Shown: positions 4,301-40,500 of the stretch, piece after piece
Layout of the letters: each line of letters begins with the position of its first letter
Position numbering within the stretch: the stretch's first letter is position 1
Assembly (NCBI RefSeq): GCF_000150275.1
Contig: NW_002060945.1
Coordinates: forward strand, 1,306,199-1,370,198
Direction of reading: 5' to 3'
DNA: 64,000 bases
Source of the DNA: Trichoplax adhaerens
Taxonomy: Eukaryota; Animalia; Placozoa
Notes under the pieces: generated by a model
What the model was told of the DNA's origin: nothing
The model's input: the letters and a program-made list of their open reading frames with translations, nothing else
The model's database searches: none
Program-made: the position numbers and the translations under genes

Positions 4301-7300
4301 GGAAATGTGGAAATAATATGAAAACTTAACTTAGAAGCTATTTACTTTGATTAAATAGCAGTTGTCATTACGTGACATAATCTTGCTGAGCCTTATCGTT
4401 ACTTTATGAAGTAATAGTTTAACTACTACCCTGACGACACTATAGAACGAAAGAATTAGTAACAAACTTAAGTTTTGAAAACAATTTATTAATTAGTTTG
4501 CACTAAATTTGAGGCTGACAGCAATATCTACCATTAGCCTATTAATGTATTATACGTTAAATTTGGGCTCTATACGTGTATAGCAAATTATAAGCTTTTA
4601 TTACCATGCTTAGTACTGCAATATATTCCCTCTCATGCATTGCAAACGTAACTTGTGTTTAGTGGACCAGCCTGGCAATATTAAAGCTAGTTTATCCATA
4701 GATCATATTTTACTTAAGCAATTCTTCATTTGATTTGTTATTTGAGCCATAATTACTGCTTTATATTATCATAGCATTTCTTAGCATGCTCATTGCACAA
4801 CTTATGATTATTTAGGAAGCAACGCTACGTCTTACCGAAGACTTAATCCGAAAAAATGATTTCGTTGGTGTTTCTAAAGTTAGTATATCGTACAATGTAT
4901 TTCATATTTGTTAGGATTGACAAAATATCATAAAATCTGCCTAACATCATTGCTTAAACAGTTAAAACTATTTATAAATTGATGTAAAAGTTATGGATAG
5001 GTGATCAAGTTATTAGCCATCTTAAGGTCATATTGCAAAATCATCAAGATTATGGCATCTACCAAATAACAGTGAGTAGTCGTGTACGAGCTTGAACCCA
5101 ACATCCTTTCCAATTGAGCTAAATAAATTGGCTATTGAATCATTTTGATAGATCGTTTTAGAAACTATCGAAAGAATGATGGACAACCATAGACCCATAA
5201 TACAAGTACTGCCAATACCAGATATGTATTTACAATTTTGTCTATTTCTAAGGGAATCTCGTCTGTTACAGGTGGTCATAGATCAGGATATTATTACGCC
5301 AATTTTAAATTGCACGAATATCGTAAGCTATTGATGTTTCCTTATCTTATTTCAATTTTATACTAACACGATAGAAGAAATAGTAAATTTGTATATGAAT
5401 GGATATTCTAAAGGATAAATCAGCTTTACAACCTATGATACAGCTCATTAGATTGCCGCTAGTTTATATCAGTTCAATGTTTAGTAATAATACTCTGAGA
5501 ATAAGATTTTAATTCCATATAAAATTCATCTAGGTAGAACATAACAAAATACTCTTATAATTCGGAATTTATAAAGTTGCTATCCGACTGCAATAGTTAT
5601 AAGAATTAAGCATCTGATGATATAAGGTTGACGATCGACAAAGATTACCAACGCACATCTGAAAGCTAAAAAATGTTCCAAACTCCTACTCAAACAGTGC
5701 ATGACTTTGAATAGTTAACAATTCAGTAAATAAATAAGGAACTAAGCGATTTTAGATATTCATCTTGTAGCATGTTAATGTGTTTTTAACTAGAATTTTT
5801 TTCATGACAACTACCTGGACGTTGTCTTTAAAGATTATATATTACTATTTTCTTGTACATTGCGTTTCTTTATTAAGATAGCTTATTTATTGTAATTCTC
5901 ATCAGAAGATGCCATTACATCCTATACATATATATAAACAGATGATTTAATAATGAATACAGAGAATAAGAAATATTCTGTGTATAATTCAATTTTAGTA
6001 TTCTGACCTACATTGGATAACCTGGAGGATCATTCTTCGTGCAGTTAAATTTAGGCCAAAAGAGCAGGTTACGAAATAAATGTATATGGCGTATTTAAAC
6101 TTAACTATTGTCATGTGATATTTTAAAATACTGTATATCACTTTAACATCAATTTCTAGGTCCAGTCATTAATGAAGCACTATAACTTGACATATCTCCT
6201 ATGTAATAAATTGCAGACGGAAAATGATTGCAAGGTAAAATTCAATGATATATGGAACTATATCTATATCTATCTTATTTACTATAATGCAAAGCATCCT
6301 GTAGAACTATTACTAAGCAAAATTTTATGATCAATTTTAAATCTACACATACTGCAATACTGTAAATGCTGATAGGGCCGAATATTCTATATTATTTGTT
6401 ACCCATAGTTAAAGAATTAATATAAAATTTAAAATATTCATATACTGTACACCAGAACTTAAATGTAAAAGTTCTAAAACTGAGGAAGTCATGCAGACAT
6501 CATTTGATAGCTTCTAAGATTTTCGTAAGGCGATACATATGAACGTCTATATATTACTGACAGCCTTACTCCTTACAGCACGGATTATCTCTTAGCGTAG
6601 TATGCTGTACTATCGTCAGCATTTTAAAATAATGCTCTACGATAATATAGCCTACAAATTAAATCTTTTAGGAATAACCTTGTATCTGGAAGCCAGAGTG
6701 TTTTCTTATAGTGTGCAATTGTTTTAATAAGAATTTGTAGCCTCGCTTTTTCTTTAGATATAATAGGCTAAAGGAAGAAACGTAGTCATACAGCAATCGA
6801 TTTTTTCAATTCATGTTCTTAGTCATTTTTATATGATATAAATATTAATTGACATATTTTTATATAATGTAGAGCTTAAAAAATGTACTAAAAACCATGT
6901 TGTCATTTACAGAAATCTTAAAGGTAAATATATTACTCATATTAGATACTCTTTTTAAATCTTGTGGAGTGTACGTGTATACTGCAATATCATCGTCTCC
7001 AAGTTGATGCTTTCAGGAAGTAAAGTGCTTAGAATATTGCAAACATAACCTTTTCTATATTTCCTTAGGGCATGCCAGATCTAACATCCAAAATGAAAAT
7101 AGATGGTAAGCTACCTTCGAGCATGTTGTAATAGCTAAATATTCTAGCAATTTGGATTTTTTATCTAATATCCAAGTTCATCATGACATTGTGTTAGTAG
7201 AGATTCAAAATGCAATCAACCTATCATGTTATAATCCGTTGATTTTTTTGGTAGTATTATCTAGGATCGATCTAATATGCAATAAATATAAAGATGATCA

Positions 7301-7373
7301 GAGATTAATACAACTTGCTCAGGAACTCCATCATTTACTAAATCGTAAAAATTCTAACTGCCGATTGATGTAG
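1342..7373 (+). CDS. Divergent importin-alpha-like armadillo-repeat protein, paralogue A (multi-exon; ends in CaaX CRLM)
   Basis: Phase-consistent GT-AG exons: 1342-1359 MEDHAQ, 1714-1749 PLDVEPLWYIWK, 1856-1911 KLEDATSQSLIRQHIHSLR, 2924-3015 YDLQFESMDII, 3117-3203 LLIQLLSSPYEEIAIKSIQILQVYA, 3600-3680 TEFLQATASTLNIC, 3794-3838 IMQIIAILIQSDSVK, 5272-5322 VVIDQDIITPILNC, 6160-6234 VQSLMKHYNLTYLLCNKL, 7255-7373 VLSRID...NCRLM*. These peptides align in order with importin-alpha ARM repeats (LQFEA, LLxSP, FLRN..VNLC, VID, FCNLL). The start codon and the exons between ~2040 and ~2780 are not fully resolved. Confidence 0.75.
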
Positions 7374-16500: not shown

Positions 16501-18978
16501 TTTAGAAGATGTAAGAAGGCGTCAAATATTGCTAAATCACTCTTAAAAAATTGCTTTCTGCGCTATAATACTCATTTCAGGTCCAACTAATGTTCAGATT
16601 CTGAGTTTAATTTTTATTTTACAGCTGGCTGCGATTGCTTGTGTTCTACTTCAATCTAATGATGTTGCAGTAAGTATTATTATTATTTAGCGAAACATAG
16701 GCACGTATATTGGAATCCTTAAAAATTCCAACCTATAAATTAGGCCTTAAGTATTATACTATCCTGATCGCAGATTTCCGGTGAGATGATTTCATTGTTG
16801 GTGCAAGTATCTTCAGAAACGACATCTAGTAATGGGGTTAGTTAAAGCTATATCATTGCTGAAATTGGGATAGATGATTATTTAGATATTTTAAAATTGG
16901 TTATATATATTGAGTTTGGTAATGGTATTAAAAGTCAATCTTCTATTTGGAATTAGGCGTATATCAAAAAGTTATTTAACCTGATACCTATTGGCAACAT
17001 TTTTGAAGTTCTAGCGGTGGGATCAATTCATCTAAGTGTAGGTTTAATTTTATTATGATATTAAACCGAAGAATAGAACTGGTTTTTAACTAGTGACTAT
17101 CTTTTTCAATTAACTGTCTTAATACAATTTCATTTACATCTAGATATCCGTTGCATCTATGGTCTTCAATATTATTACTTCAAATTCTATTTCTCACTCT
17201 TCTCAGGTACTGAACATTGATTTATTTCTAGATGCAATCTGACTAAAATTTTTTCACTCCTAGTAATGATGGATAAAATTGTATCCTGATCCATCAGATG
17301 TAGTTTGCAGTTTGTACGCTATTTAAGCAATATTATTTTATATACATCATGATGGGATTAAACTTAGTCTGATTACGTTTAATAATATTTTAACCAATAA
17401 ATAATTAAGCAACACTAGCTCATCTTTTTATACCATTACGATTTCATAGTTTCATTTTGGTCGAAAAACGTTAATATACTTGAAAAAAATGTTGAAAAAG
17501 CCTTCCAATTATACTGAATCCCAATTAAAGGTATGTACATTACAGTATGAAAATTGTATTAAGAACTTTGATTAGCGTGAGATACTGAGTGAGAATTTCA
17601 AAGTAATATTATTGTTACGATTATTTTTTAATTCAATAAAATCTACAAAATTATTTCCTATAATGTTTGATACTTTCTTTTTAGAAATTAATTTGGGAAA
17701 TCGGCTGGTTTGCCAAAGCTGATCATGCTTTAGTTCAGGTAATTTGCATCCCTGTATTTAAAATTAATCCCATACATGTATACGTTTGTTAAAACCAATG
17801 CTACCCTGTACTCATTTCAATGGCTATCAAACAACTAATAAATTTCTGTTTAATTTATTTATTCAGGTTATTATCGACGAGGATATTTTGTCAACCGTCC
17901 TTCTATGTGCTGAACAGGCAAGTTTAATTCAAGGATTGATACATTAGGTAGCCCAAATCTTCGAACTTGATTTTTCATCTATTTCTACTACCAGTTTCCT
18001 TACTTGTATGGCAGCATTATTGTACAAACGATTTTCTTTGTCATTGGCTCTGGGAATGAACATCAGGTTAATATCTTGTTTCTGATACTTTAAAAATATT
18101 ACAAAAATTGAGCACTAAGACTTTTTTATATATTGAAAAATCTGAATAGATAAAAGTCTTGATTCCAAGTTGCAATTTAACCCAGTGTTTATGTTCCATA
18201 TTATTACATAAGAATGTTCTTTACGTAAGTTACTACATAAATCAAATCAAATATTATACTGATATTGTGGTGTCATCATCAGTATGATTTATACACTGTT
18301 AATTCCGTACAGATCTAAAATTACCTTACCTACTGTATAATATTAAAATCTTATGTACATAACTATTAGGATATTGTCCGAGTTGTAGAAGTATTATGGA
18401 CAATTTTAAACAAATGCCAGGTACTGTTAATCCTTAACTTTACTGACAAATTTTATAATTAATTTCATATTTTAATATCGCTTATCGATATTGATGTGAT
18501 GGAAATATGAAGGTAATATTAAAATGTATCATACTGTAATTGAATTTTTACGTCAGGAAATACCTGGATTATTGGAATGCAATAATAGCAAAGGTAGGTG
18601 TTTAAGTTTTAACTGATAGAAGTCTATTCATTTTATTGGATAGAGAATGTCTTTTAAAAAGCCCAATAATATGTTTAATTTAGCAATGTTATTGATCATC
18701 TGTATTTAGAACTGATGAAAATGGAAATCATATGCGATTCAATTGTTCGTAATCCAATTGTGCCGAGAGAGTATGAAGGTAAGCCTTTGGTTTTCATGGT
18801 AAACTCAATTTAATTGCGATATATTTGTTTCATTGCAGCTATAAGCTTAATTGGGGAACTAATAATTCAATAAATTCAAGTAATGACTCATAACGTTTTC
18901 TATTTTAATTTTTTCCATATAGATTGCGCAAAAAAACTTGGACGATTCATAAAATACAATGCTATTGCTCAACATTAA
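13570..18978 (+). CDS. Divergent importin-alpha-like armadillo-repeat protein, paralogue B (multi-exon)
   Basis: Exons homologous in size and phase to paralogue A: 13927-13982 (56 nt, TLQSANNGDNILRILQKLR), 14547-14647 YDLRLEIMDIL, 16035-16121 (87 nt, LLLHFLSLPYEDLAIKSMQLLSVYA), 16427-16510 VEFMHAAATVVNIC, 16625-16669 (45 nt), 17685-17738 KLIWEIGWF, 17867-17917 VIIDEDILSTVLLCAEQ, 17995-18066 (72 nt), last exon 18923-18978 ...KYNAIAQH*. The ATG at 13570 is tentative. Confidence 0.7.
14665..14950. repeat. ~75-bp degenerate tandem repeat x4 in an intron of paralogue B
   Basis: Recurrent (ca)tgatt(g/a)atttatc(t/c)actt..atcatct. Confidence 0.85.
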
Positions 18979-19917
18979 TAAAACGTTAATATCGTTTTTG
19001 TGTAATGAAAGGTATTATTTAAAATCATTTTCTTTCGTTACGGAAATATTTACGCAAATTTTAAACGTTCAATCACACTTGAAAGGGTTTAAAAGTTAGA
19101 ATTGATCATAGTCTTTATCATTAATATATTAATAGCTCGAAACTATTATTCCGGTATATATAAACATACAATTAAAGCAAACTATTTTAGTACTGTTGTC
19201 TTTGCTATATCACTATTATCGTCAGACATAGAAGAAAAGCACTGGGATTTCATAATCGTTGGATTGAATCAGTATCGAAATGTATTATTTTTTCTTATTT
19301 CATAGTAGCTAATAATTACCGAAATATTCATCATCTACAAATCTGATATTATATTTGTCTTGTAGGGTAAAATTTTGGGTAAACCTAGATATTTTATAAC
19401 TAATAATGATAATACATTAATGTTCATAAGTAATTTACTAGAGTAACCCAAAATTGGGAGATTATTTACACGTATCCATCCATTAGCTTTGATGAATATC
19501 TTTCTATAATAACAACTATGGGCTTACACATGCAATCTATCAATTTATTATCATGAAATAGAAAAAGACCTCTTAAAGTCAATCTTATACAGCAATATTT
19601 GAATTATCAGCTTTACTAACTCAATTTATGCCATTTATTACTTCTTCCAGTATTCCGATATTTATTTCACTACTTATATCAATTTCGAGACGTAAGCAAT
19701 TTTATACTGATACATACTGTATATCTGAATAATAAAATTGTGTGAATAGAAAACATAAAATTCTTGTTATACACGTATTAAAATAATTTAAATACCATAA
19801 GTAACATAGAACTTTTAACTGCCGAACCGAACTCATAGGCTGTTCATCTCGTGGACTGTAAAATATCGGCAAATTAATAACTATGTGAGATAATTAATTA
19901 ATCCCATTTAATTTATT

Positions 19918-25180: not shown

Positions 25181-26292
25181 TACTTAAATTTAAACGGAAT
25201 TTAGATTTTACTGTCGATGACGTTAGTCGAACTCATTTATTCGAAACTACAAATCATAAGTGATTAGCAGGCGCTTGTGTATTCGAATTAGAGCAAACCT
25301 AATTCAATATTATAGTTATTTTGACAGTGTCCTAACCTCTTGTTCAAAATGATGGTATTCGCTCAATACCTTAATTAAATGGCGAAATTGACATTATCAT
25401 CAATGACTACAGTTTACGGATAGTTTCCGGTTAAGTTTTCGCGGAAGTATCAGAATTTTTAGGCAGTCGTTGACATTTATTAATCAACTCAACTAAAAGT
25501 AAAGCCTTGCCACACAGATGGAGCTTTACTATACTCTCAGTACTTTAATAAGTAGCATTTAAACATCACTTTCAAACTTGCTTGAGATTAAAACTAATTA
25601 AATGCTTGCTCGTAGCTAGAGAAGTCAAATTACAATTATTAGGTCCAGCTAAAAATATTTGCCCAAACTTTTATTTGCATATTTTATGATGTCGAAAGGC
25701 ATTAAGCTACAATTAAGATATTGAACGCTTCTGTTTTGAACGGAAAACATCGCATAATCTTCGTGTACCATTGCTATCTTTCGAGTGCTAAGGCTGATAT
25801 AAGTAGCAAGATTACTTCATATTTAAATATAGCTTTTAAAATTAAATCACTTCATTACCGTGAATAATATCGATATAATAGTGCTTGAGTATCTATCTAG
25901 TTGCTCATACGTATAGTGGAGGAGTAATCGTTACCCATACTCCTAATCTACGAGAATTAAGACTTTAAAATCAAGATCGTTAATAATAATGTAAATTTCT
26001 AAATTTTGATGCAATAATCAGTTGCATTACTCATACGCATAAGTAACGATGTTTAAATACTTTAAGGCATGCATTATGCAAGAACTAATATAAATATTAA
26101 TGGTAAAGTAAGCTTTACTAGTTTGATCATTTATGCAGTTGTTCGTCATGTATTTTAACTCAGATATTTGTGATTGTGGCTACGCAGTTTATAATCGAAT
26201 TAAACAAAATTTAAAGCTATAATCTATCGTTATGCAAAAATACTTATTTATTCTAATCAAAATATTTTCACGGCTGCAATTCTCATCTACAG

Positions 26293-29200
26293 ATACTAAA
26301 TATTAATACACTATGGCAGGAATTAGAGGTAAGAACGATTTAATAATGACAAATCACTATTATCAACTCATCCTATTTTTATATTGATTAGTTGCTTGTC
26401 TTAATCTTACATTTGCAAAATTTGATAGTCTTATAATCCAGCAAATCTTCAACCTGTAATGTTGGCATATGTGGAAAATCTTGGGTAATTTCATGTCTTG
26501 TTATATCTTGCTATAAGTACTACACTATCTAGCTATCTAAGATATTGACAGAAGCAAAATTTAAGCAACTGTATTTTAACAAACAGTATCCTATTAATTA
26601 TGAACTTGTTATGTCTTTAAACACTTCTTAACGTAAATAAATATATTTTAAACTCAAGGAGGATTGTTTCGGAACTGATCTCAGTGGCAATTGATAATAG
26701 CCTAGCTACCTATTGCCATTCCTTAGTAATGGAAGATGTCGTTAGGTTTGCTCTAAGAATCTAACTTCATGTAATGTTTCAACCATAACTACAAGTGAAC
26801 TGAGACAATTGATATATCTGGAGATTCAGTGATAAGTAAATAGCTTTAAATATTTCGTTTGATTATTTTAGTCAAGTAGATCACGACAGCCAGCACGATC
26901 CATTCTTCCTTGTCCGGTAATCATATAGGACATCTGCATATTAATATCGACTTTTTAGTAATTCTTCGGCAATATTTATTGCTACATACGTATTACTTCT
27001 AGTGATCGATTACTGGCTAAACTTATTTCTATTTTGGAAAATTTCGAAGAGTAAGTCAATCCATACTAAATTATTATAAAAATTGGCTGTAATGTATACT
27101 ATCTGAACAATTCATTGACACAAACAAACTGTACTCATTCTCGTTGCGGCTTTCAGTTTCGAATTGCAGATGGAAACTACAAAAGTTATAATCACGTTTA
27201 TCGATTATTACCATGGATATGTGGTCTTTCAATGTCCAAATATTGAATCAGGTAATCGTTTTTAAAATAAAATCGACAAAGTTAATTTTTTAAATATAAA
27301 AACCATACGTCTATATTTCAATGTGAGCTGATGATCTCACATTTATAGTTTACGTTGTTATAAATATGACTGATTGTATTTGCAGTAAGATTTTATGCTA
27401 GAGTCACAATAATAAGTATGGCTAGTGCTAAAAATTCTAATGGAATTGTAATATTTGGTGATGGTTATCTAATGGAATTGTAATATTTGGTGATGGTTAT
27501 CTAATGGAATTGTAATATTTGGTGATGGTTATCGGTACCCTAACCTTGTAACGTAGTTTAAATATGTTTTATTTTAGACGATATGAGAACTCTCATTTCG
27601 CTTATCTCATCTCCATATGAAGAAATAGCCTTAAAATCGATGAAGATTATCCAGACATATAACACTACAAAAACCTATACAGGTTTAAATGCAAATAAAC
27701 TTTTTTAATATCATTAGAATGAAATTATAACTTTCTCAAAGGATACCAGCTAAACTAGAAGTCTTCTTACCATTAATGCGTTGATTTACCAATTAGCCTC
27801 TTATCGCGTGCCATGTTTACATCTAGGAGAGCATCTAGTTCTAAAATGTGGTTTAATGCGAGAATTAGCCAAAGTAGCTACTATCAGTAAATCGGTAAGC
27901 TATAGCTAAATATATTATATGCGTATTATCTTTGGTTATTATACCCGCGAAAGTATCATTTAGCAAAATTAATGAGTTAAGTCTACTTTTTATATTTATA
28001 TTTTTAGACTGCGTTCCTTCAAAGCGTTGCTGCAACCATTAATACTTTGGATTGGACAGTCTTTCGTAGCTTTAAGGATTACCATGCTGACGTAAGATAT
28101 CTCAATTTTTTGTATTCTCTTAGTAAATTCACTTTATATAGTACATGTACCAATGTTTCATAATCCATGGGATAATAAGATTATGATAATTTTATCACTA
28201 TAGCTTGGGATCACTATTTCTATTCTAATGCAATCCAACAATATACAGGTTATTATTTCACTACTTAGAATATTCTATTTTTTCCCCGTATACTCTATTG
28301 TGTGTATTTATACTACAGAAATATATCCATGGCAATGTATTTACTACGGAAAACGCTATTAAAGTAATGATTTAATCTAACAAGCTTATGATAATTGATT
28401 CATTTAGGTCCTACGAATGACAATTAAAGCACTGACTAAAATGACAAAATTTGATTCACAACATGTTAGGGTATGTTGATAACAATTTTCTTGCTGAATC
28501 TTGTATACATATATGTACATGATCATTTCCTTAACTTTGATGCTATGTTTTATATCTGTCACATATAAATGTTGCTTACTCCTATGTTCGCCTTGGATTA
28601 ATATCACTGCATCAAATATTTGCCATCATTAATTTTCCTATTTGATTACATTATCTATAATAGGAAGTTTTTCAGTCCTTGCCAGTGACGTTAGAAGTTC
28701 TAAAAAGCGAATCACCGCGTTTATTTGTAAGAAAAGTGTGAAACGCACGATAGTATCCCTCAAAATCGGATATGACTAACTATATATTTACATTATTTTG
28801 TTAGGATATTACCGTAAAACTACTAGAACTCATTGCAAGAAGAGTTCGATTTCGTTCACAAACGAAGGTGATTAAATAGATTTAAGACTGTTACAGGGTC
28901 AGAGATAATTCTCTGCTGGCTAATATGATAGTGATAGTGAAATTATAAATACATACTAAATTAATGTGTGTTTGATACAAGTATTAATATTAGTCTTAAT
29001 TTACAAACATAATGACTACTGATACATTAATTTTATAATTGTATAAAAATGGCTGCTATTTTATCGTATTTACAGTTATTAATTGGTTCCAAAATCATAA
29101 TTTACCTGAAAACAATGCTACAGAATCCAGGCTTTTGCAATATATCACAATTTCGAGTAAGAATCAAAATACCAATTTGCATTATTATTATCTTTAATAT

Positions 29201-31014
29201 AGAAATAAATATTCCTAAGCTGTCTTTCAATTGGATGGATTACTTATTAATACAATGATCCGTATTGTTTAGGTACTTTTTAAGGTGCTAGATGATTTTT
29301 CCGCAACAAATGATGCCCTATTACAAGTAAGAATGATGTGATAGTACAATATTTAATTGGATGGATATATTTGCATTTTCATAAACTGTATCTTATATTA
29401 ATTAGACTATCATACAAAGATATATATTCAGTCTATTATAATACCTACAGAACATATCAATTTTAAGTTTTTCTAAACTACCAATTTCAAATTATTATTT
29501 GGTACGGCACTTTAATTTAGCTTCTATAAAAGCAGTCAATTTATTCAATTTATATTATAGTAGCTCTGATTTAGTATGTCCTAATGAACAACTTCAAAAT
29601 TTTTGTGGAGCATAGTCCTAGTATTTAGGTTGAATTATAAATACCACTACTAGAACTTAAACGATGCTATAGATATTAACGTCTTATTGAATTCTTACGC
29701 TATAATAAAATTTAGGCCGCTAGGGATTCTGTTTCAAGATTTAAAATCAGTTTACTAAATTAGAATTTAAGCTATATTGTAACAGCTATATTCCGCATAG
29801 CTTCTCTATTAAATTCACTTAGTTAGAATAATCAGCTGTTTATTTTCAAGTATAGTCTATATTGAAATTTCTTTACCTGCTTCAAGAATTTGACTGAAAT
29901 TTATATGATTCACATTTAATATACTTTGCATATATCAATTATATCCCAAAAATACGCTTGTGATTAATTTACTATAAATTTCAGTGCCGTTTAATATATG
30001 ATAATATTCATTTCGTGATCCATTTACAATAATAGAAGCTCATTAGCGATTCTGAAACTTTAACTACAATTCTATCCTGCGCCGAACAAGTAAGATATTT
30101 TTTATTAGTATTGCTAAATTGGCACAGTACGTATTTTAAGCAATATATGTATCCTGATTTACTATAATTATAGGACTTCATCTATTTTCGAACAACGGCT
30201 TGGAGTATTGTATTTCGAATTATAACAACTGCCACCTCAGAACAAGTAATAAATTAGTATTAGATCATCAATGCATGTTTATTACTGTTTTCATAATCCA
30301 CATTATTTATCTAAACGGTTTCTGTATTGAATATCTTGACAGATCCAATATTTGCTAGATCAATCTAATCTGAAATATTATCTTTGTAACCAATTACTAA
30401 ATACAGCTAGCATTGAGGTAAATCATTTCACACTCCTATCCAAATAATCATTTAATCTACTTCTGTACATATATAGTTTCAATAAATATGACGTTATTGA
30501 CAAGCATATGAAAGAAAGTAGTTAAATTGATAAATCAAAAGCATATATCAATAATATAACTAAAAATTACTGCTATTAGAATCTTCGCAAAACCCTAAAT
30601 GCTATGGCTACAATAGCTACCAAGTGCAAGGTAGCATTAATATTTATATCATTTCCTTTATTACCTAATAAAATCCCCATGGTTATGAAATACGTTAATT
30701 ATTTACTTTTTATATATCGATTTAACAGCGATTTCCAAGCTTGTCCGATGATATGAAAGCAACTGGTAATTATAACTTGTAAAACTTATTGATTCAATAT
30801 TAAATGCTTACTTAAGCTTATTGCTCGATTTTGATTTAATTTCAACTTTCTCGGACATATTATTTCATCTATTCGATTAGTAATATCTAGAATTGACGCT
30901 ATATACAAGGAAAACCGCGATATTAATTCTATATCTGAACCAGCTCAGAAATTACGACGTCTCATGAAAACGAAAAAGGTTAAAAAATTCGATATCGGAT
31001 GTACAATAACTTAA
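26293..31014 (+). CDS. Divergent importin-alpha-like armadillo-repeat protein, paralogue C (multi-exon; polybasic tail plus CaaX CTIT)
   Basis: Exons: 26293-26328 ILNINTLWQELE, 26429-26484 (56 nt), ~27157-27251 FELQMETTKVII, ~27578-27682 LISLISSPYEEIALKSMKII, 27827-27894 HLVLKCGLMREL, 28008-28091 TAFLQSVAATIN, 28204-28248 (45 nt), 30174-30245 (72 nt, DFIYFRTTAWSIVFRIITTATSEQ), 30343-30417 IQYLLDQSNLKYYLCNQL, 30881-31014 VISRID...KTKKVKKFDIGCTIT*. The start codon lies upstream, possibly the ATG at ~26100 directly before a GT donor. Confidence 0.75.
27436..27533. repeat. Perfect 32-bp tandem repeat x3 in an intron of paralogue C
   Basis: tctaatggaattgtaatatttggtgatggtta is repeated three times. 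Confidence 0.97.
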
Positions 31015-31870: not shown

Positions 31871-33670
31871 AGAGCTGATTAAAATATTGGTTATGAACAA
31901 GGAGAATCATCAGACTAGCAAATTAAAGTACGAGACTTTAATTTGACATCAAGTTGTCAGTATTACGTCCCATTGGTTCCAAGATAGCTACTACTAGCAG
32001 GCAGTGCAGTATAAGCAGCTATTGGAATGTTGCCAGCCTTCATATATCGGCTAACAGTAGCTTATCTGACGTTTATTTTCTTTTGCGAAATGTGTTCTCT
32101 GATCTTATAGCTCAATCTAAAGCACTTGCCGAAAGCGGAATACTATTCCAACTCTTTTGCTTGCTTAATTTGTTATTAACTAACGATGCATGCAAAACCA
32201 TTTAATGTAATTAGACCAGACTCACTTGCTCGCTATCTAATTCACATAAAGGTGTAAGGCGGTGTAGTAGGATACTCGATATAATCTAATCAAATTATTA
32301 TAGTTGTAATGTTAAGGAGTTATTAATCTATGACAATTTGTCCAGCCATCATATACGTACCTTCCGTATCTGCGATAGGGTATGAATGAAATATCTGAAT
32401 ATGTATTAATACCCGGCTACCATGGAGAAATTTTGTTCACCCACATAGGGAAACTCACTATCAGTCATTCCACCGCTACGAAAAACAAATCTATCTAATG
32501 ATGCAATCGCCTTTTAATACTTCAACATGTCTTTAAAAATTTGAATATGGGAGTTCACGAACCGGTTAGCCAAGAAAATCGATCCGAAATCCTAAATTAT
32601 CAGTCGAATTCCGTTTTACCATTTTGTGTGTAAGTTATAATATTAATTCAGTAGTGTATCACTTACGACAGGCAATTGCATTTTCTAACCTACATATTAT
32701 AAATTTATTTTTCATATCATATAATTAAATCAATCTACAATTCGATTCAATTTGATTAACGTTCCTTGGCAGTAAATACGACATTACATTCTTGATTAAT
32801 GTTAGTAGCGCAAAATAACCACATTATATTATCTATCAGGTATTGAGGCTAAATACTCATAAAGCGTTCGTACAATACAACTTATTTTCTTGTATAATTA
32901 CCGATACTATAAATAATGTCGCAGTGTATTTAAAAATAATAATGCAACATGGCCAATAACGACGGTACAATTGAGGCGCTTCATAGGTACCGTAAAATGT
33001 GATGTAGATTGTACAATATAAATTTTTAAAAATAATGCCACATTATAATTACTGATAGCGTATTATATCAATTCAAAAGTACTAAAAAATCGGCTGATGC
33101 CTATTTGGCAGTATTTTAAACATTACAGTTGATATCTGCGTAAGTGATACAAATAGTATTGGTATAACAATATAAATCACCCAAGCAAACCTAAAGATTA
33201 TGATATACAAAAAATTTTTCTTTCTTGCCGATATAAATTTATAAGGCGCTTATTGAAAATAACCATCTACGCAAAACTTTTAAATTACAATTTATGCCAA
33301 TAAGAATGCCATTTTTAAATTCAGCAACAATCTATTATATGCCAACCTTATACGGTCTTAGTCAGCGACGTCATCGTACAATAGCTAGTATTGGTTATTG
33401 TATAAAAACTAAAGATAGTGCTATATTACAATAATCGTTAGTTAGCTGGAGGAATCATTTATAACAACGGTGCTCGTCTAATCCATTATATTTTCTACAT
33501 TAACAACTCCACACAAAGCATACAATAATATCAGCATTTGCAAAACTACTGCTTGTTTAAAATTTCTCTAGTGAAATAATAACAACAGTAATTTGTAATT
33601 CGCTGCAACGGAGTCATAGCTATATGAAAAATTAAACAATGGCTGGGAATAGCCAATAAGCTTGTAACCA

Positions 33671-36600
33671 TTAACGTACAGCAGTTATGAACTTATATCT
33701 TAGTAAATCTCCTGCACTTGGTCTTGACTTAGTATCTCTAGTAACGATAAAGAAAATTTGTTATAACAGCAATTTAAAATTTCATAATTAGCTGTAAATG
33801 ATATTAATACCGTCTGAATGTTGCCCTTATAAACTCTTTAGCAGATTCTGAACTATGTTCCGGTAATGAAGGATAGATCTGTTCGGTAGCAATCTTGAAG
33901 ACTGCCGCTAACGGTTCATATTCACGCAAAGGAGGATGAGCTGTTAACATCTCAACAACCGTGCAACCGACGCTCCTAAAAACATTTAACACAACACGTT
34001 CAGTATCTAGTATTAACGACATTGCTTTTGTGATATACATACCAAATGTCAGCCTTTCTACCATAGCCTTCGCCTTTTGCAACTTCTGGACTAATCCAAT
34101 ACGATGTGCCATGAAGTGATTTAAGTCCACTCATTGTTTGCAATGACTACGATAAATTAAAGAAATGTAACCATTATACTATACTATCAGCGTTATCAAC
34201 AAATAAAATTACTGAATCAGTAATCATCTGCAAAATCGGTATATTTTATTTCATTTTAACCTTAATTCTTCTTGCAGACCCAAAATCAGCTAATTTCACA
34301 TTTCCGTAACTATCTAATAAAATATTCGCTCCTAAAATAAAGTTAGAGGATTAATACATTAAAATATCACACATGATACCATCATTTGGATATAATATTA
34401 AAATTAATCGATTGCCTTTAATATCGCGATGAACTATCAAATTAGAATGAAGATACGCTACTCCTTCCAGTATTTGTCTTGTATATTTCCTCGTAGTACT
34501 TTCAGGCAAGACACCATTTTTCCGAAGGTACTCAAATATCGAGCCCTAAATTGGAGAAATGCAATTATTTCACAATGAAAAAGTACCCAAAATTTACGAT
34601 ATCCTCACGTACGCCGGGCATATATTCCATTAAGATAGACAACTCTATTTCATTATATTCGGCTCCATAATAAGAAACGATTCTATCATGTCTTAATTTT
34701 CGTAGTAATTCAATCTCTGCTTTTAGAGCTTCTACTTCCTAAAGTCAAAAGATCATGAAAACATTGTAACACCAATGAAAAAAGTATAAAGAAAATTTAG
34801 TTAACTAAATACCTTGCGTGCATGATCATTACTATATGTCTTAACTTGCTTTATAGCAATATAGCGCTTATTGGTCTTGTCATAGCCCAAATATACCTGT
34901 ACAACATTAAATATATGTTAATCTAAAAATATCAACATAGGCAGTGAATAATTGGTATGACTAATGATTTTCCAACTAGACTCACTTGGCCAAACGCGCC
35001 AGCACCTAACAGCTTCTCCTTTTGCCATCTAAATGATTTTGCTGCGAAAATAATCAACAAATATAAGATCTAAATTCGTGGAAGAAAGAAATATATTTGT
35101 TGTATTAAACTTACGATCTGATGTTGTTAAATCACGCAGTCGTTGTAAAGCAACATCAACATCGCTAGGTCTTCTATTACCAATTCCCCCATTCCACTGT
35201 TCATGATCATGTAGGCTACCACTACTACCGTAATATTCACTATTTGATACGCTATTAACTGACAAAAGCTGAGCTCGAGGAAATGTTTGTCTTCCTACAA
35301 AGAAAACATATACAACACTCATAACGTAAGACATAAAACAGCAAATTTAGAAATAATTCTATTGCATGCATAGCCAAGCCTACCGTCAATATAGCTTTCA
35401 TCGGTAATGGTATTATCATATACAAATCTTCTACTAGGAAAAGTACCCGATTTTCCACTTAATTCTAAGAGAAAATTGTTCAATAAAAATCGAAATTGAG
35501 ACAATAATTAAAGTCGTTTAATAGCTTACCTGCATAATCGTAAGACGAATTATCCCACCCTCGATTAACTCTGGAGGTTGATCGAGAAATATTTTCACTT
35601 TAAGGGATAAAGGATAATTGAAATTAAAATCATATTGAACACTTTAGCGTAGTCTATAAGCTAAGGTTTACCCTGAGTGTCCCCCAGTAATTGATAGTTG
35701 GCTGCTGTTAAGAGATGAAGATGATCCTATCGAGCTTAGATCTGAACTTGACACTCCATACTGTCAGTAGTTATGCATAATAGAATCATCAGAACATGCT
35801 TGGAGATTCACTACTTAGCATTAACAATATTTTCTTACCTTACCTCAGTAAGAATTTAATGATTACTGATTTTCGTATCTACTGGCTAATAACTAATAAG
35901 TTAAAAAATTACAAACCTGTCCTGCTACCACTGGAGGCGAAGTTGGAGGGAATTGGTGATGTGAATCGTCCTACAAATGTTAAAATTGAGAAAGGTTTAA
36001 AAATAGCAGATGACTTTTGAGGATGTATTGTAATTTCATGAATAATAGCATACCTTATTAGCATAATTTTCAGGTATAAAAGTTCCTTCACCCTACATAT
36101 AATAACAGTAACCGAAATTTGATTTATTATATCACCGCTAACAGCTAAATTACATTACTAGAGATGTAGCGAGCTAAAATCAAAAGCATACAGCAATTAA
36201 ATGAACAGGTGTCTGAATTTCTTCATCCGGATTAAATCCAGGAGGTGGAGAATCTCTACCAGGTATTTCTTGGACTGCGTTAGTAGACTTTATGTCAAAA
36301 GTTTTCGCTTTCAACGTTCCCTCTTTATCTATATCATCATATAATTGTACGCTATCGCCTTCAGTTGTTCCATCCGTATCATTCTAAAACATCAGAGGGG
36401 TAAATTAAATTGCATGATGCGTATTCGTAAACTGACTATATCATGCAGTCAGGAATAAAAATTTCACATGTACGAATGAGTACCTGAGATTCATCGCAAT
36501 CATTAACAATTACTTCAGATGAGTAAGAATTAGTTTCTGATGTATCTGAAATCGTTAATAGAATCCTGACACACGTGGCATTGGGGTTATTCATAGAGAT

Positions 36601-37554
36601 ATCAACAACTTTGTCGACATGCGACTGTGAAAGAATTGGCGTCATAATCATCTACGAGCATAGAAAAATTATCAAATATTATTAGTTGAGATGTAATATA
36701 AAGTTCGAATCTTTGAAATGTATCATGAAGAATTTTCATATCAAATTACGTGTATTAATGTTGTATAATAGAATAGTTAAAGAAAGAAGTAGTAGTCCTA
36801 GATCAAAAATGCTGATAAGAATATCAACTATACCTCAGCTTCATTCATTACAAAGTTCATCGCTAAATCTCTACCAAACAATTTTCTCACACGAATAGCA
36901 AGATCTTCATATTGTAATGGCCGGGGAAGTTGACAAACTCTACACAAGTTTAACAGTTAATTATTACAATGATACTAATATAGTAATTAGTTTTTTATTT
37001 CCACATATACAACGTTAGAAGCAGTATTAGGCGCCCGATAGATTTAATAAATCAAATATATATTTGCAGACTGTATCTTATAAAATTGAAAAGTTCAAAA
37101 TTTATAGATATAGATTTAAATCAAGTGATAACAGTTTTATTGTACAATGTAGATCACTGTATCTAACATACACTCTTCAAGAACTACAACAGTTACCATA
37201 ATGTACAACACTACTACTGTACTTACCGTTTTTCATATTGGTACTGAAATTTGACCCGGATATCATTCTAAGTATATAAATGAGAATAACAAATAAATAA
37301 TGTCTTGCTAAGATAGAGTAATTTAATTTTGCAATACAATTCCACCATAGTAAATATTAGCTTTGCACTAAAACTCAAGAAAGCTAGTTTATATTTAATA
37401 GCATGTTATAATAACACCGATTTAAATAGGGGAAAATAAATACAAACCTGCCATGGCAATCCATCGTGCCTTATAGTAGGCCTATTTCTTACGCCAACTC
37501 GTATAGCTGGCATTGTATGACTAGGCCTAGATGCTCCCCTGACATGTCTGTCGC
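33671..37554 (-). CDS. MAP3K2/3: Mitogen-activated protein kinase kinase kinase 2/3 (MEKK2/3) orthologue: PB1 domain plus STE11-family kinase
   Basis: PB1 exons on the minus strand: [14 protein letters not shown] (37227-37267), [13 protein letters not shown]...FGRDLAMNF (~36834-36939), [13 protein letters not shown]...VRILL (~36484-36651). Linker motifs [21 protein letters not shown] and GRQTFPR. Kinase motifs LLGAGAFGQ|[80 protein letters not shown]; stop TAA at 33673-33671. The first coding exon lies further upstream (candidate ATG at 39127) and is not resolved. Confidence 0.93.
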
Positions 37555-40500
37555 CTAAATTTAGACAAAACAGAAACACGTTGAGTATAACAATAATTTT
37601 TAGCCTACCGGAATATTAAAAAATAACACTAATATCATAAGACCAGAACATCGATAGTGATTCTTTCCATCATTATAAATTAAAACACAAGATTTATGAA
37701 ATAGGATATTTCAACCCTGGACGACTATCGGATCTTATTCTAGCAATACCGGATTACTTGTAACTATCAGTTACGGTTAAATACAATCCCGATTTAAAAC
37801 TACCAACAGATCGGCTAAGAAAGTTTTAATAATGAAAATGTAAATGTTTCTTCCCTAACTTCAATACAACTAAATATTAAGGTATTGGTTTTTTTATTTT
37901 ACTATTGTATTACTATCATGGTTCACATCAACACATCAACTTTCATTAGCGATTTAACATTAACAATAAAATTAATTATAATCTAGTGCGAATAGAATAT
38001 ATTTATACATCAATAGGACAAAAAGTTAGCGATGCTATCTTTTACTCCAACAAAATATTAAAATAACACGAATTCAAATTTAAGACCGCTGTAGTTCTAG
38101 TTCAATAGATAAGATTGTAAATCTTTTACGTTCGAATACAAGATTTCGGACATTAAAATATCGTTATGATAATTAAATGTACGATTCATGTTAGCGTAAT
38201 TTGAGTCTTGATTATATGATGAAAAATCTTGCCATGTGTGATATGATGAAATCAGATAAATGGTACAGTACTGACTGTACTGTAAAGTATACCGTAGTGC
38301 TGTATATGATATGCGATATCAACCAATAATTATAATTTGAAACATATATTATTACATATTGACTTTAACGATACAGTAGAGCAGCAATTGAGTAAATAGA
38401 AAAGTTTGTCTACGCTCAGTCATAATGACCAAAATAACACAGCCGAGGTAGTAATAGTACTTGTGTATGGTTGATGAGAAAAGAATAACCACCGGAAAAA
38501 GTTATTTTACCAATTCGGCAATAAACAAAATCCTTTTAAATTAGTACATAATGCATATTGTGTTCGATGCCTGTTATAGAATTGAGTTGCCTAGAAGAGG
38601 CAAAAGAAAAGCTCTATAGAATTGCATTTGACATTTCGTAAATAGATCTTTGTCAAATACAATCGTAGATTTTGATATCCTTTCTAGGAGAACGTAAATC
38701 ACTATTTAATGTTGCGTCAAATTAGAAGAATTGCAAGATTTATAATCTTGTAACAGTGGAAAGATTGTTATTGAGCTCATTAATAATATTAAATATATGA
38801 TTATATAAAATAAAGGAGCACTTCTTTATTTAATTATCAACAGTTCTATCATGCTGTATAGCTAACAGGAAACAACAATGTAAAATAATAGCTATCTTTT
38901 AAGACTACCACATAACAACTACGTAAAATGTACGCTTATACTACATAAGGTACTGATAAACTAGAGATATTTCTTAATAAATTCGTTAAATAGATTGTAT
39001 ACTATAGCTGATTAATTATAATTATCAGCAGTGTACTAAATACTACCATTCAATATGCCAAGCTACGATAAGCACTAGACATACATACAGTATTTACTCC
39101 TCTACCTGGTATAATACGATTTAACATGGTAATATTGTCATCAAGTCATTTCCTGAAACATTTATATAGGAGATTAAAAAAATTAAACGACTAGGAAGTC
39201 AATCATTTGAGTTCCTTATTTTGCTACTGCTTATTATTGACTATGATAAGACGATTAAAAAAATATTGTATTTAAACACAATAATTATAATGAATTTTAA
39301 TTACTAATGATGCAATCAGGGACTATTACTGCATAATATGATATCGGAAAGATACCGTGCTTCTGTTATTATTGCAGTTATTTAAAGGTTATGAGAGGTA
39401 GTAGAGATTTTTAAAAAAATAAATTAATCTATTGTTACGTCTGAAATCATCACAAAATTTCTTGACGTAATAGTGTACGTAAAATATGGTACAACAGCAA
39501 TTTCATATCTCTAATAATAATTAATTCCAATTAACTGGAAGCTACTTTTAAATTTAAAGTAAGGATAATACACCAATTTATGCAGTTGAAGATGAAAAAA
39601 TTTTTCCTCTAAAGTCTATACTTGATCCCATTGAATTTAACTGATGGTCATTATGGAAGTAAACACGATGAATTTACGACCTAGGTATGAAAAGTTAATC
39701 TAAATTGGGACGTTGTAATCATTGTCAGAAAACAGAATTAAGTACAAATAAGTGGTTGATATCAGAAATTATAGTAGCAACTATGACTGGGGGGAGGGGG
39801 CACTACAAAATTTTAATCCAAAAGAATTATAATATAATGAAAATAAGCAGATCCAATAGAGTTTGAAATCTTAAAGAGTGGTAATCTTACGACTTTCATT
39901 CTATAATAGTTATAATCAATTGACAAGCCGAGACTGATACGCTAGTGAAAGCTATGGTTAAGGATTTCCGATAAAAACTACGCGTATAATTAGATTTTCT
40001 CGCATACGTCTTTTACCATTAGGAAGCTAGAAAAATATGGATTAAAATGTTCACGATTGAAACGACTGAAAGCACTGAATTATACGATCGATATAATTCC
40101 TATGTGACGATAATAAATCTAAATAACTCTTACAGTCGAACGAAGTACTAGGCCAGTAGAACGTATATGTAGAAGTATTTACAGATCGAAGATGGCATCG
40201 ATGATCTCCGTTGTTGTCCATTTCTATCTAACAGTAGAAAATAACGGGAAAAAAGACCACTTTCTGATTGGGTATTAAAAGAACTTTCGGTTAAGGACCA
40301 ATAGTCTAGTGGGTTTTTTCTTTTTACTCAGAAGGCAGCAATATTACCACTTAATTTTTACGATGGTAATTGAAAATACTCTTACGTTTTACCGATGCCA
40401 AAGTTAGAATTAAGAACTAAATGATGGGGATGATTAATCAGGTTGCAATCGTACTAGTAATCAGATCAGTTGCTCATCGTTTTATAATAAGCTAGCCCGA

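What the first reader, a model, noticed from the sequence alone, without database searches (positions are those of the whole stretch)
30881..31014. Paralogue C has a K-Ras4B-style polybasic plus CaaX tail (KLRRLMKTKKVKKFDIGCTIT*)
The terminal exon is homologous to that of paralogue A (VISRID vs VLSRID, same phase) and again places Cys exactly four residues before the stop, here after a dense Lys/Arg patch. A polybasic region plus CaaX is the classic plasma-membrane targeting signal. Having C-x-x-x-stop in two otherwise very divergent tails of different length argues for selection. Paralogue B ends in ...AIAQH* after an extra intron, so it would be the soluble member.
Basis: partly seen in the sequence, partly recalled or inferred. 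Interest (0 to 1): 0.8.

Follow-up and report, generated by a model that had tools for sequence, protein, structure and literature searches.

The report
Possible lipid-anchor tail on placozoan armadillo protein
A fast-evolving Trichoplax protein, built like the nuclear-import adaptor importin-alpha, really ends in a basic patch followed by Cys-Thr-Ile-Thr. This plausible but untested lipid-attachment signal could tether it to the cell membrane, and only one of its sister genes has such a signal too.

Summary
Window 30881-31014 is the last coding exon of Trichoplax adhaerens gene TRIADDRAFT_54156, which matches TrispH2_002538 (499 aa, 22 exons) in Trichoplax sp. H2. Both public gene models end ...KLRRLMKTKKVKKFDIGCTIT*.

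The protein has no Pfam or sequence match. Its predicted fold is an armadillo (ARM) solenoid closest to importin-alpha. It belongs to a family of at least 8 very divergent paralogues, found here only in Trichoplax.

I could resolve six C-termini. Only two have Cys at -4: A (CRLM) and C (CTIT). The other four end without it. The chance of two or more in six is about 0.003-0.012.

CTIT contains none of the residues that block farnesyltransferase. Its Ile at a2 is favourable. The last 14 residues are predicted to be disordered. The genome encodes prenyltransferase beta subunits and ICMT.

My best reading, at about 50%, is a farnesylated, polybasic, membrane-anchored ARM scaffold.
- No RNA evidence was reachable.
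- H2 is identical in protein and 99.4-99.6% identical in DNA, so it says nothing about conservation.
- No orthologue outside Trichoplax was reachable.
- The weak internal donor at 30979 cannot be excluded.

This is a new variant of a known kind, of moderate interest. The scan has already flagged many other CaaX ends in this genome.

The parts
30881..31014 (+). Terminal coding exon of paralogue C (131 nt plus TAA). It encodes (V)ISRIDAIYKENRDINSISEPAQKLRRLMKTKKVKKFDIGCTIT*.
31000..31011 (+). CTIT, the candidate CaaX box. Cys 31000-31002, Thr (a1), Ile (a2), Thr (X). The stop is at 31012-31014.
   Evidence: Farnesyltransferase rules from PMC10320760.
30949..30987 (+). Polybasic stretch KLRRLMKTKKVKK (8 K/R in 13 residues). 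The first half lies in the predicted last helix and the second half in the disordered tail.
30979..30984 (+). Candidate internal donor AAG|GTTAAA. It scores 5.1 bits on a PWM of this gene's 21 donors, which range from 3.9 to 11.0. An unused exonic GT at 28690 scores 5.3. Use of this donor is neither shown nor excluded.
26054..31014 (+). Whole gene C (TRIADDRAFT_54156 / TrispH2_002538): 22 exons by exact spliced mapping of the H2 protein on H2 DNA, carried over to the window. The last six exons are 30036-30089, 30174-30245, 30343-30417, 30580-30630, 30729-30765 and 30881-31014.
7255..7373 (+). Terminal exon of paralogue A: (V)LSRIDLICNKYKDDQRLIQLAQELHHLLNRKNSNCRLM*. CRLM is a canonical CaaX box.
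18710..18979 (+). Paralogue B 3' end. Exon 18710-18777 (ELMKMEIICDSIVRNPIVPREYE) is followed by an extra intron and then exon 18923-18979 (DCAKKLGRFIKYNAIAQH*). No Cys at -4.

Best explanation
Paralogue C is an expressed, lineage-specific ARM-repeat protein derived from importin-alpha. It has no Pfam-detectable IBB domain and no W-x-x-x-N motif (NLS-binding residues). Its roughly 14-residue disordered C-terminus carries a working CaaX box. Cys496 (numbering of the 499-aa model) would be farnesylated by FTase because X is Thr. The -TIT tripeptide would then be removed by an RCE1-type protease and the new C-terminus methylated by ICMT. The adjacent Lys/Arg patch would give electrostatic affinity for acidic inner-leaflet lipids. 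Together these would tether the ARM solenoid to the plasma membrane as a scaffold. Paralogue A (CRLM, weak basic patch) would be farnesylated but directed to endomembranes. B, E, F and G would be soluble or nuclear. Shown here: the sequence, the gene models, the fold class, the family, and the enzyme genes. Inferred: the prenylation, the processing, the localisation and the scaffold role.
For: Two independent public models end at CTIT. The H2 models come from evidence-based MAKER prediction using transcriptomes (PMC6057997). In the yeast all-CXXX screen, FTase is restricted mainly by D/E/K/R at a2 and K/P/R at X. CTIT has neither. CKQT was 96% prenylated, and Ile at a2 is a positive determinant in the Ras reporter, which requires the complete three-step pathway (PMC10320760). 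The last helix is at 475-485 and residues 487-499 have pLDDT below 50. Three prenyltransferase beta-subunit loci and one ICMT locus are present in the genome. Cys at -4 is shared with paralogue A although the linker length differs by 5 residues and the exon is only 36% identical. Two of six tails have it, P = 0.003-0.012. No upstream Cys lies in the last 40 residues, which fits the K-Ras4B type rather than the palmitoylated type.
Against: There is no RNA, proteomic or biochemical evidence. No RNA-derived fragments were found. The only orthologue (H2) is identical in protein and 99.4-99.6% identical in DNA, so conservation is untested. Four of six resolved paralogues lack the Cys, and F has a basic tail without it. 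a1 is Thr and X is Thr, so the box is not textbook. About 1-2% of all proteins end in CxxX (PMC11152559 abstract), and this scan has flagged 21 CaaX findings in this genome, so a look-elsewhere effect applies. The structural model is poor (pLDDT 52.6). The internal donor at 30979 is weak but within the range of real donors.
Confidence: 0.5

Rival explanations
1. The Cys at -4 is a coincidence. The conserved, functional feature is the basic C-terminal end of the family, which acts as a classical NLS or as a direct lipid or protein contact. KKVKK fits the K-K/R-X-K/R pattern. CTIT would be a neutral extension that is not modified or does not matter.
For: Basic or His-rich ends occur in paralogues without Cys: F ..LKSKKK*, E ..NKYHK*, G ..IQKFK*, B ..AKKLGRFIKYNAIAQH*. 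About 2% of residues in this protein are Cys. The family evolves very fast, at 15-46% identity in alignable exons. A polybasic region beside a prenyl-Cys can act as an NLS when unprenylated, as shown for Rac1 (PMC2364699 abstract).
Against: Two Cys-at-minus-4 tails among six is unlikely by chance (0.003-0.012). Both have an aliphatic a2 (L, I). Most accessible CXXX ends are FTase substrates in yeast, so an exposed CTIT would probably be modified whether or not it was selected for.
Confidence: 0.3
2. The annotated C-terminus is not the one made. Either the donor at 30979 (or another site) is used and a downstream exon replaces VKKFDIGCTIT, or the gene is weakly or not expressed and is decaying as a member of a rapidly turning-over family.
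For: The donor AAG|GTTAAA scores 5.1 bits, inside the range of this gene's real donors, 3.9-11.0. B has an extra intron in its homologous exon. No transcript-derived protein fragments of 32-103 aa or 197-628 aa were found in the 5.8-billion-cluster library. H1 has a stop (TAA versus TCA) in codon 15 of the H2 first exon. D has a phase conflict at its last exon.
Against: Both public models end at CTIT. An equally good GT inside exon 28664-28726 is not used by the model. The tails of F, E and G end at about the homologous position without further exons. All 22 exons are intact in H1 from Met18 onward.
Confidence: 0.15
3. The tail is an intramolecular ligand. The importin-alpha-derived groove would bind its own polybasic (and prenylated) tail, as the IBB segment autoinhibits importin-alpha or as SmgGDS holds PBR-CaaX GTPase tails. 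That would make membrane binding switchable.
For: The nearest fold is importin-alpha. The nearest language-model clusters include SmgGDS/vimar at 0.95. KKVKK is NLS-like.
Against: P0003 has no W-x-x-x-N motif at all. No Arm or IBB Pfam hit was found. The Atlas feature score is at a level that shuffled proteins reach about 1 time in 100, and the hits are generic ARM families. No model of a tail-groove contact exists.
Confidence: 0.05

Closest known systems
K-Ras4B hypervariable region (polybasic stretch plus farnesylated CVIM)
   Same: Cys at -4, aliphatic a2, a dense Lys/Arg cluster within 17 residues upstream, no nearby palmitoylatable Cys, and a predicted disordered end.
   Different: The tail is attached to an ARM solenoid, not a GTPase. 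The box is CTIT (a1 and X are both Thr). Four residues (FDIG, including an Asp) separate the patch from the Cys. About half of the basic residues sit in a predicted helix. Nothing has been tested experimentally.
Importin-alpha (karyopherin alpha)
   Same: It is the best structural neighbour: Atlas TM 0.60-0.61 over residues 6-488, and top Foldseek PDB hits at E about 1e-4. Paralogue D keeps importin-alpha signature motifs (IWTLKYLTD versus VWALSYLTDG, TPALKTLGNVVAGN, FWVFSNV).
   Different: No IBB domain and no Pfam Arm or Arm_3 hit above threshold. No W-x-x-x-N motif in C. No detectable sequence similarity to PDB importins. C has a C-terminal CaaX-like end.
Lipid-anchored ARM-only scaffolds such as yeast Vac8 and apicomplexan ARO (from my own knowledge, not tested here)
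   Same: The concept is the same: an ARM solenoid fixed to a membrane by a short lipidated terminal peptide so that it acts as a docking platform.
   Different: Those proteins use N-terminal myristoylation and palmitoylation. Here the anchor would be C-terminal farnesylation plus a polybasic patch. No sequence relationship has been shown.
SmgGDS / RAP1GDS1 / vimar
   Same: An ARM-only protein of similar size. It is the nearest cluster by protein-language-model features (0.95).
   Different: SmgGDS binds the PBR-CaaX tails of other proteins and is not itself prenylated. There is no sequence-level match, and the Atlas score is compatible with generic ARM similarity.

Membership tests
CaaX prenylation substrates | Cys exactly four residues from the C-terminus of the mature reading frame | tested here: met
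   Two public models end in CTIT.
CaaX prenylation substrates | No restrictive residue (D/E/K/R at a2; K/P/R at X); ideally aliphatic a1 and a2 | tested here: met
   a2 is Ile and X is Thr. The rules come from PMC10320760. a1 is Thr, which is not aliphatic, but a1 is the tolerant position.
CaaX prenylation substrates | Accessible, flexible C-terminal segment | tested here: inconclusive
   In the AF2 single-sequence model the last helix is 475-485 and residues 487-499 have pLDDT below 50. The whole model is of low confidence (52.6).
CaaX prenylation substrates | Conservation of the Cys(-4) in orthologues and paralogues | tested here: inconclusive
   H2 is identical but only about 0.5% diverged in DNA. 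Paralogue A has CRLM. B, E, F and G lack it, and D and H are unresolved.
CaaX prenylation substrates | Prenyltransferase and processing enzymes present in the organism | tested here: met
   Three PF00432 loci and one PF04140 (ICMT) locus in G000. RCE1 was not searched.
CaaX prenylation substrates | Isoprenoid actually attached | not testable with these tools
   This needs metabolic labelling, mass spectrometry or an FTI-sensitive shift.
K-Ras4B-type polybasic plus farnesyl plasma-membrane signal | Cluster of at least about 6 Lys/Arg just upstream of the CaaX Cys, with net positive charge | tested here: met
   The last 20 residues hold 7 K/R against 1 D/E, or 8 K/R in the 17 residues before the Cys. 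The patch is separated from the Cys by FDIG.
K-Ras4B-type polybasic plus farnesyl plasma-membrane signal | No second-signal Cys (palmitoylation) upstream | tested here: met
   There is no other Cys in the 43-residue terminal exon.
Importin-alpha family | N-terminal IBB domain and Pfam Arm/Arm_3 repeats | tested here: not met
   Pfam finds nothing significant on P0001. One exon gives Arm_3 at 16 bits, below the 28.8-bit cut-off. None of the paralogues appears in the genome-wide PF00514 scan.
Importin-alpha family | W-x-x-x-N NLS-binding ladder | tested here: not met
   No W...N motif in P0003, which has only 3 Trp. One such motif survives in paralogue D.
Importin-alpha family | Ten-repeat ARM solenoid fold | tested here: met
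   Atlas structure search gives TM 0.60-0.61 to importin-alpha clusters. Foldseek PDB top hits are importin-alpha at probability 1.00, but TM is only about 0.35 because the model is poor.

The most novel reading that the evidence does not exclude
Placozoans turned a duplicated importin-alpha into a family of ARM scaffolds without the NLS-binding motifs. Two members (A and C) acquired C-terminal farnesylation signals, one of them with a K-Ras4B-like polybasic patch. This would create a plasma-membrane-anchored ARM docking platform. I found no such class (a C-terminally prenylated ARM-only protein) in the literature I searched. Its own NLS-like tail might also be held in the groove as a switch.
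Probability: 0.3. Interest if true: 0.6.

Novelty: new variant of a known kind. Interest (0 to 1): 0.4.

Why it matters
If the tail is prenylated, it would be a clear example of how a soluble transport adaptor fold (importin-alpha) can be turned into a membrane scaffold by adding a short lipidation and charge module. It would come with natural controls in the same genome: a CaaX member with a basic patch (C), a CaaX member without a strong patch (A), and a member with the patch but no CaaX (F). It would also add a non-GTPase member to the short list of polybasic-plus-farnesyl proteins. If the Cys is incidental, the finding reduces to a fast-evolving, placozoan-restricted ARM gene family near the beta-catenin locus.

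Tried and rejected
- A phmmer search of the terminal exon against 1.84 billion representatives found only the Trichoplax protein itself, plus a spurious repeat protein.
- Three word-index searches were run: whole P0001; P0003 residues 138-240 at E<=10; and the 59-aa open frame with region 17-59. They found only the H1 and H2 proteins, or nothing. So no paralogue models, no other placozoan orthologues and no short RNA-derived fragments came back.
- An exact scan of JGI metagenome contigs with the exon n-1/n junction sequence gave 0 hits.
- The look-up of encoding contigs on P0001 returned no record. On P0003 it returned only the H2 genome scaffold.
- Pfam on P0001 and on ten exon translations gave nothing above cut-off.
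- A PDB sequence search gave nothing meaningful.
- MAFFT alignment of paralogue exon fragments to P0003 misplaced the fragments, so it was not used as a search profile.
- Exon-level HMMs were too noisy. I replaced them with a search for the conserved 75/51/37-nt exon chain, which worked.
- The per-sequence score for CTIT in the all-CXXX screen could not be read because the supplementary tables are truncated in the held copy.
- Comparing H1 with H2 for selection was rejected because only 47 mismatches occur in 13.5 kb.
- Paralogue H's 3' end lies in an assembly gap of 3852 N. Paralogue D's last exon has a phase conflict, so its tail was left unresolved.
Those paralogues were handled exon by exon, by reference or in local scripts, and only the database proteins P0001 and P0003 were used as full-length queries.
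- No contig looked human.

Full report
**Where we are**

The window is G000:C1412:1306199-1370198 of a 105.6-Mb, 1414-contig assembly. The gene under the finding is named by NCBI as TRIADDRAFT_54156 of Trichoplax adhaerens. Its counterpart is TrispH2_002538 of Trichoplax sp. H2. The DNA is about 30% G+C and carries many short exons with GT-AG introns. Rfam and ARAGORN find nothing in the window.

**The observation**

window:30883-31014 translates to ISRIDAIYKENRDINSISEPAQKLRRLMKTKKVKKFDIGCTIT*. The exon begins at 30881 behind an AG. It completes a Val codon whose first base is the last G of the 37-nt exon 30729-30765, so the intron is phase 1.

A phmmer search of this exon against 1.84 billion representatives returned a 359-aa protein, P0001, ending in the same 43 residues. 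A word search with P0001 added the 499-aa H2 protein, P0003. The two are identical over all shared residues, including the tail.

Exact spliced mapping of P0003 on its own genome gives 22 exons, and all of them are present in the window. The H2 model is the better one. For example, it includes the exon LGITISILMQSNNIQ (28204-28248), which has homologues in A and B. So the reading frame, the Cys at -4 and the basic patch are all real features of the annotated gene.

**What the protein is**

- Pfam gives nothing on P0001. One exon touches Arm_3 at 16 bits, below the cut-off.
- The PDB sequence search is empty.
- The ESM Atlas holds the sequence. Its model (pTM 0.60) superposes on importin-alpha clusters at TM 0.60-0.61 over residues 6-488. 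By language-model features the nearest clusters are generic ARM families: vimar/SmgGDS, ARMC8 and UNC45.
- My AlphaFold2 run without an alignment is poor (pLDDT 52.6) but all-helical. Foldseek still ranks importin-alpha structures first, at probability 1.00 and E about 1e-4.
- P0003 has no W-x-x-x-N motif.

C is therefore an ARM solenoid with an importin-alpha-like fold that is no longer recognisable as importin-alpha by sequence.

**The family**

Searching the genome with A's conserved exon (..LLSSPYEEIAIKS..) finds eight loci:
- A, B and C in the window.
- Three more on the minus strand upstream on the same contig. I call them E (about 1246.7 kb), F (about 1254.2 kb) and G (about 1300.7 kb).
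- D on contig C1410 at about 5032.5 kb.
- H on the small contig C1290.

The paralogues are extremely divergent, at 15-46% identity in alignable exons. A, C and D are somewhat closer to each other, and E and F are sisters.

D still shows importin-alpha signature motifs:
- IWTLKYLTDYRDENVQV against VWALSYLTDGSKQQVQV, which lies at one of the genome's strongest Arm-repeat loci, taken here to be a canonical importin-alpha gene (C1411:~936-938 kb).
- TPALKTLGNVVAGNSKQ.
- EIFWVFSNV.

This supports an origin from importin-alpha. None of the eight loci is picked up by the Pfam Arm model in a genome-wide scan. That scan does hit the beta-catenin locus just beyond the window's end.

**The tails**

The 3' end of the gene has a conserved architecture: exons of 75, 51 and 37 nt, followed by a phase-1 terminal exon. 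Searching for that chain located it in A, B, C, D, E and F, and the 51/37-nt part in G. The terminal exons chosen by similarity give these ends:

| Paralogue | C-terminal end |
|---|---|
| A | ..LAQELHHLLNRKNSNCRLM* |
| C | ..PAQKLRRLMKTKKVKKFDIGCTIT* |
| F | ..PANQLVRLLNLKSKKK* |
| E | ..LAMELIHLLHPMENKYHK* |
| G | ..LAEELYSFIQKFK* |
| B | ..PREYE, then an extra intron, then DCAKKLGRFIKYNAIAQH* |

- The H2 annotation of B ends at that stop, to within about 3 nt after carrying coordinates over.
- Nothing resembling a decayed CaaX follows the stops of E, F or G.
- D has a phase conflict at its last exon, and H runs into an assembly gap, so both are unresolved.

Two of six resolved tails carry Cys at -4. 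At a Cys frequency of 1.5-3% (2.0% in this protein), the chance of two or more in six is 0.003-0.012. Both boxes have an aliphatic a2. The distance from the conserved A-x-x-L motif to the Cys differs by five residues between A and C, while the distance from Cys to the stop is the same.

This is real but post hoc evidence for constraint. The scan has flagged 21 CaaX ends in this genome, and 1-2% of all proteins end in CxxX (abstract of PMC11152559). The basic C-terminus is a family trait, seen in F without a Cys. It is strongest in C, with 7 K/R and 1 acidic residue in the last 20.

**Is CTIT a plausible substrate?**

The complete yeast CXXX screen finds that FTase accepts most CXXX sequences. 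It is restricted mainly by D/E/K/R at a2 and K/P/R at X, and a1 is tolerant. CKQT was 96% prenylated. Ile at a2 is a positive determinant in the Ras reporter, which needs farnesylation, proteolysis and methylation. The natural CTVA box of Atr1 is fully prenylated in the Ydj1 reporter (PMC10320760).

CTIT therefore passes all the known sequence rules. I could not read its individual score, because the supplementary tables are truncated in the held copy.

The model places the last helix at 475-485 and leaves 486-499 unstructured. The genome encodes three prenyltransferase beta-subunit loci and one ICMT locus.

**What could not be tested**

The H1 and H2 regions are 99.4-99.6% identical in DNA, so identity of the tails says nothing about selection. 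No other placozoan protein, and no transcript-derived fragment, was found in any search.

The possible donor at 30979 (AAG|GTTAAA) scores 5.1 bits on a matrix built from this gene's 21 donors, whose scores range from 3.9 to 11.0. An exonic GT at 28690 that the model does not use scores 5.3. The site is weak but cannot be dismissed without RNA data. The H2 models come from an evidence-based MAKER run with transcriptomes (PMC6057997). That run is indirect support for the annotated end.

**Verdict**

The sequence observation is confirmed. The interpretation (polybasic plus CaaX membrane targeting) is plausible and internally consistent but unproven. I give it about 0.5.

The rivals are:
- An incidental Cys on a basic or NLS-like family tail (0.3). 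Polybasic regions next to a prenyl-Cys can double as an NLS, as in Rac1 (PMC2364699).
- A wrong or unused C-terminus (0.15).
- A self-binding tail (0.05).

I found no report of a C-terminally prenylated ARM-only protein in two literature searches. The nearest functional analogues I know of are N-terminally acylated ARM scaffolds such as Vac8; that comparison rests on my own knowledge. I class this as a new variant of a known kind, of moderate interest.

**Procedural note**

They were treated exon by exon. Only the database proteins P0001 and P0003 served as full-length queries. No contig looked human.

Noticed in passing
G000:C1412:~1244-1255 kb (-), ~1298-1301 kb (-); window 2900-7373, 16000-18979 and 26054-31014 (+); G000:C1410:~5032.4-5035 kb (+); G000:C1290:~7000 (-): A family of at least 8 very divergent importin-alpha-derived ARM genes. 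Six lie within about 95 kb on one contig, next to the beta-catenin locus. No homologue outside Trichoplax was found in the libraries searched. The 3' exon architecture (75/51/37 nt plus a phase-1 last exon) is conserved.
   Followed up: partly
window 26096-26098 versus L002:10043-10045: H1 has TAA where H2 has TCA in codon 15 of the H2 model's first coding exon. In H1 translation would have to start later, for example at the ATG that is the last codon of that exon, or else the H2 first exon is really 5' UTR.
   Followed up: partly
window 27436-27532: A tandem repeat of about 32 bp lies in the intron between exons 7 and 8 of gene C. H1 carries one more unit than H2, and the H1/H2 alignment breaks there. 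The truncated NCBI H1 model (P0001) takes its first exon from this repeat.
   Followed up: partly
L003+L005 (G000:C1410:5034.0-5035.1 kb): Paralogue D: the homologue of the VISRID terminal exon (VIILIIDYHITDLKIKNFCNSYSL..) is out of phase with the 37-nt exon before it. A strong GTGAGT donor lies inside it. D may be frameshifted or decaying, or it may have a different 3' structure.
   Followed up: partly
window 17866-17925: In paralogue B, the exon ..VIIDEDILSTVLLCAEQ is followed by GCAAGT, which may be a GC-AG intron.
   Followed up: no
window ~33670-39120 (-): The neighbouring gene downstream of C on the opposite strand is a 621-aa protein kinase (Pfam Pkinase in the H2 annotation).
   Followed up: no
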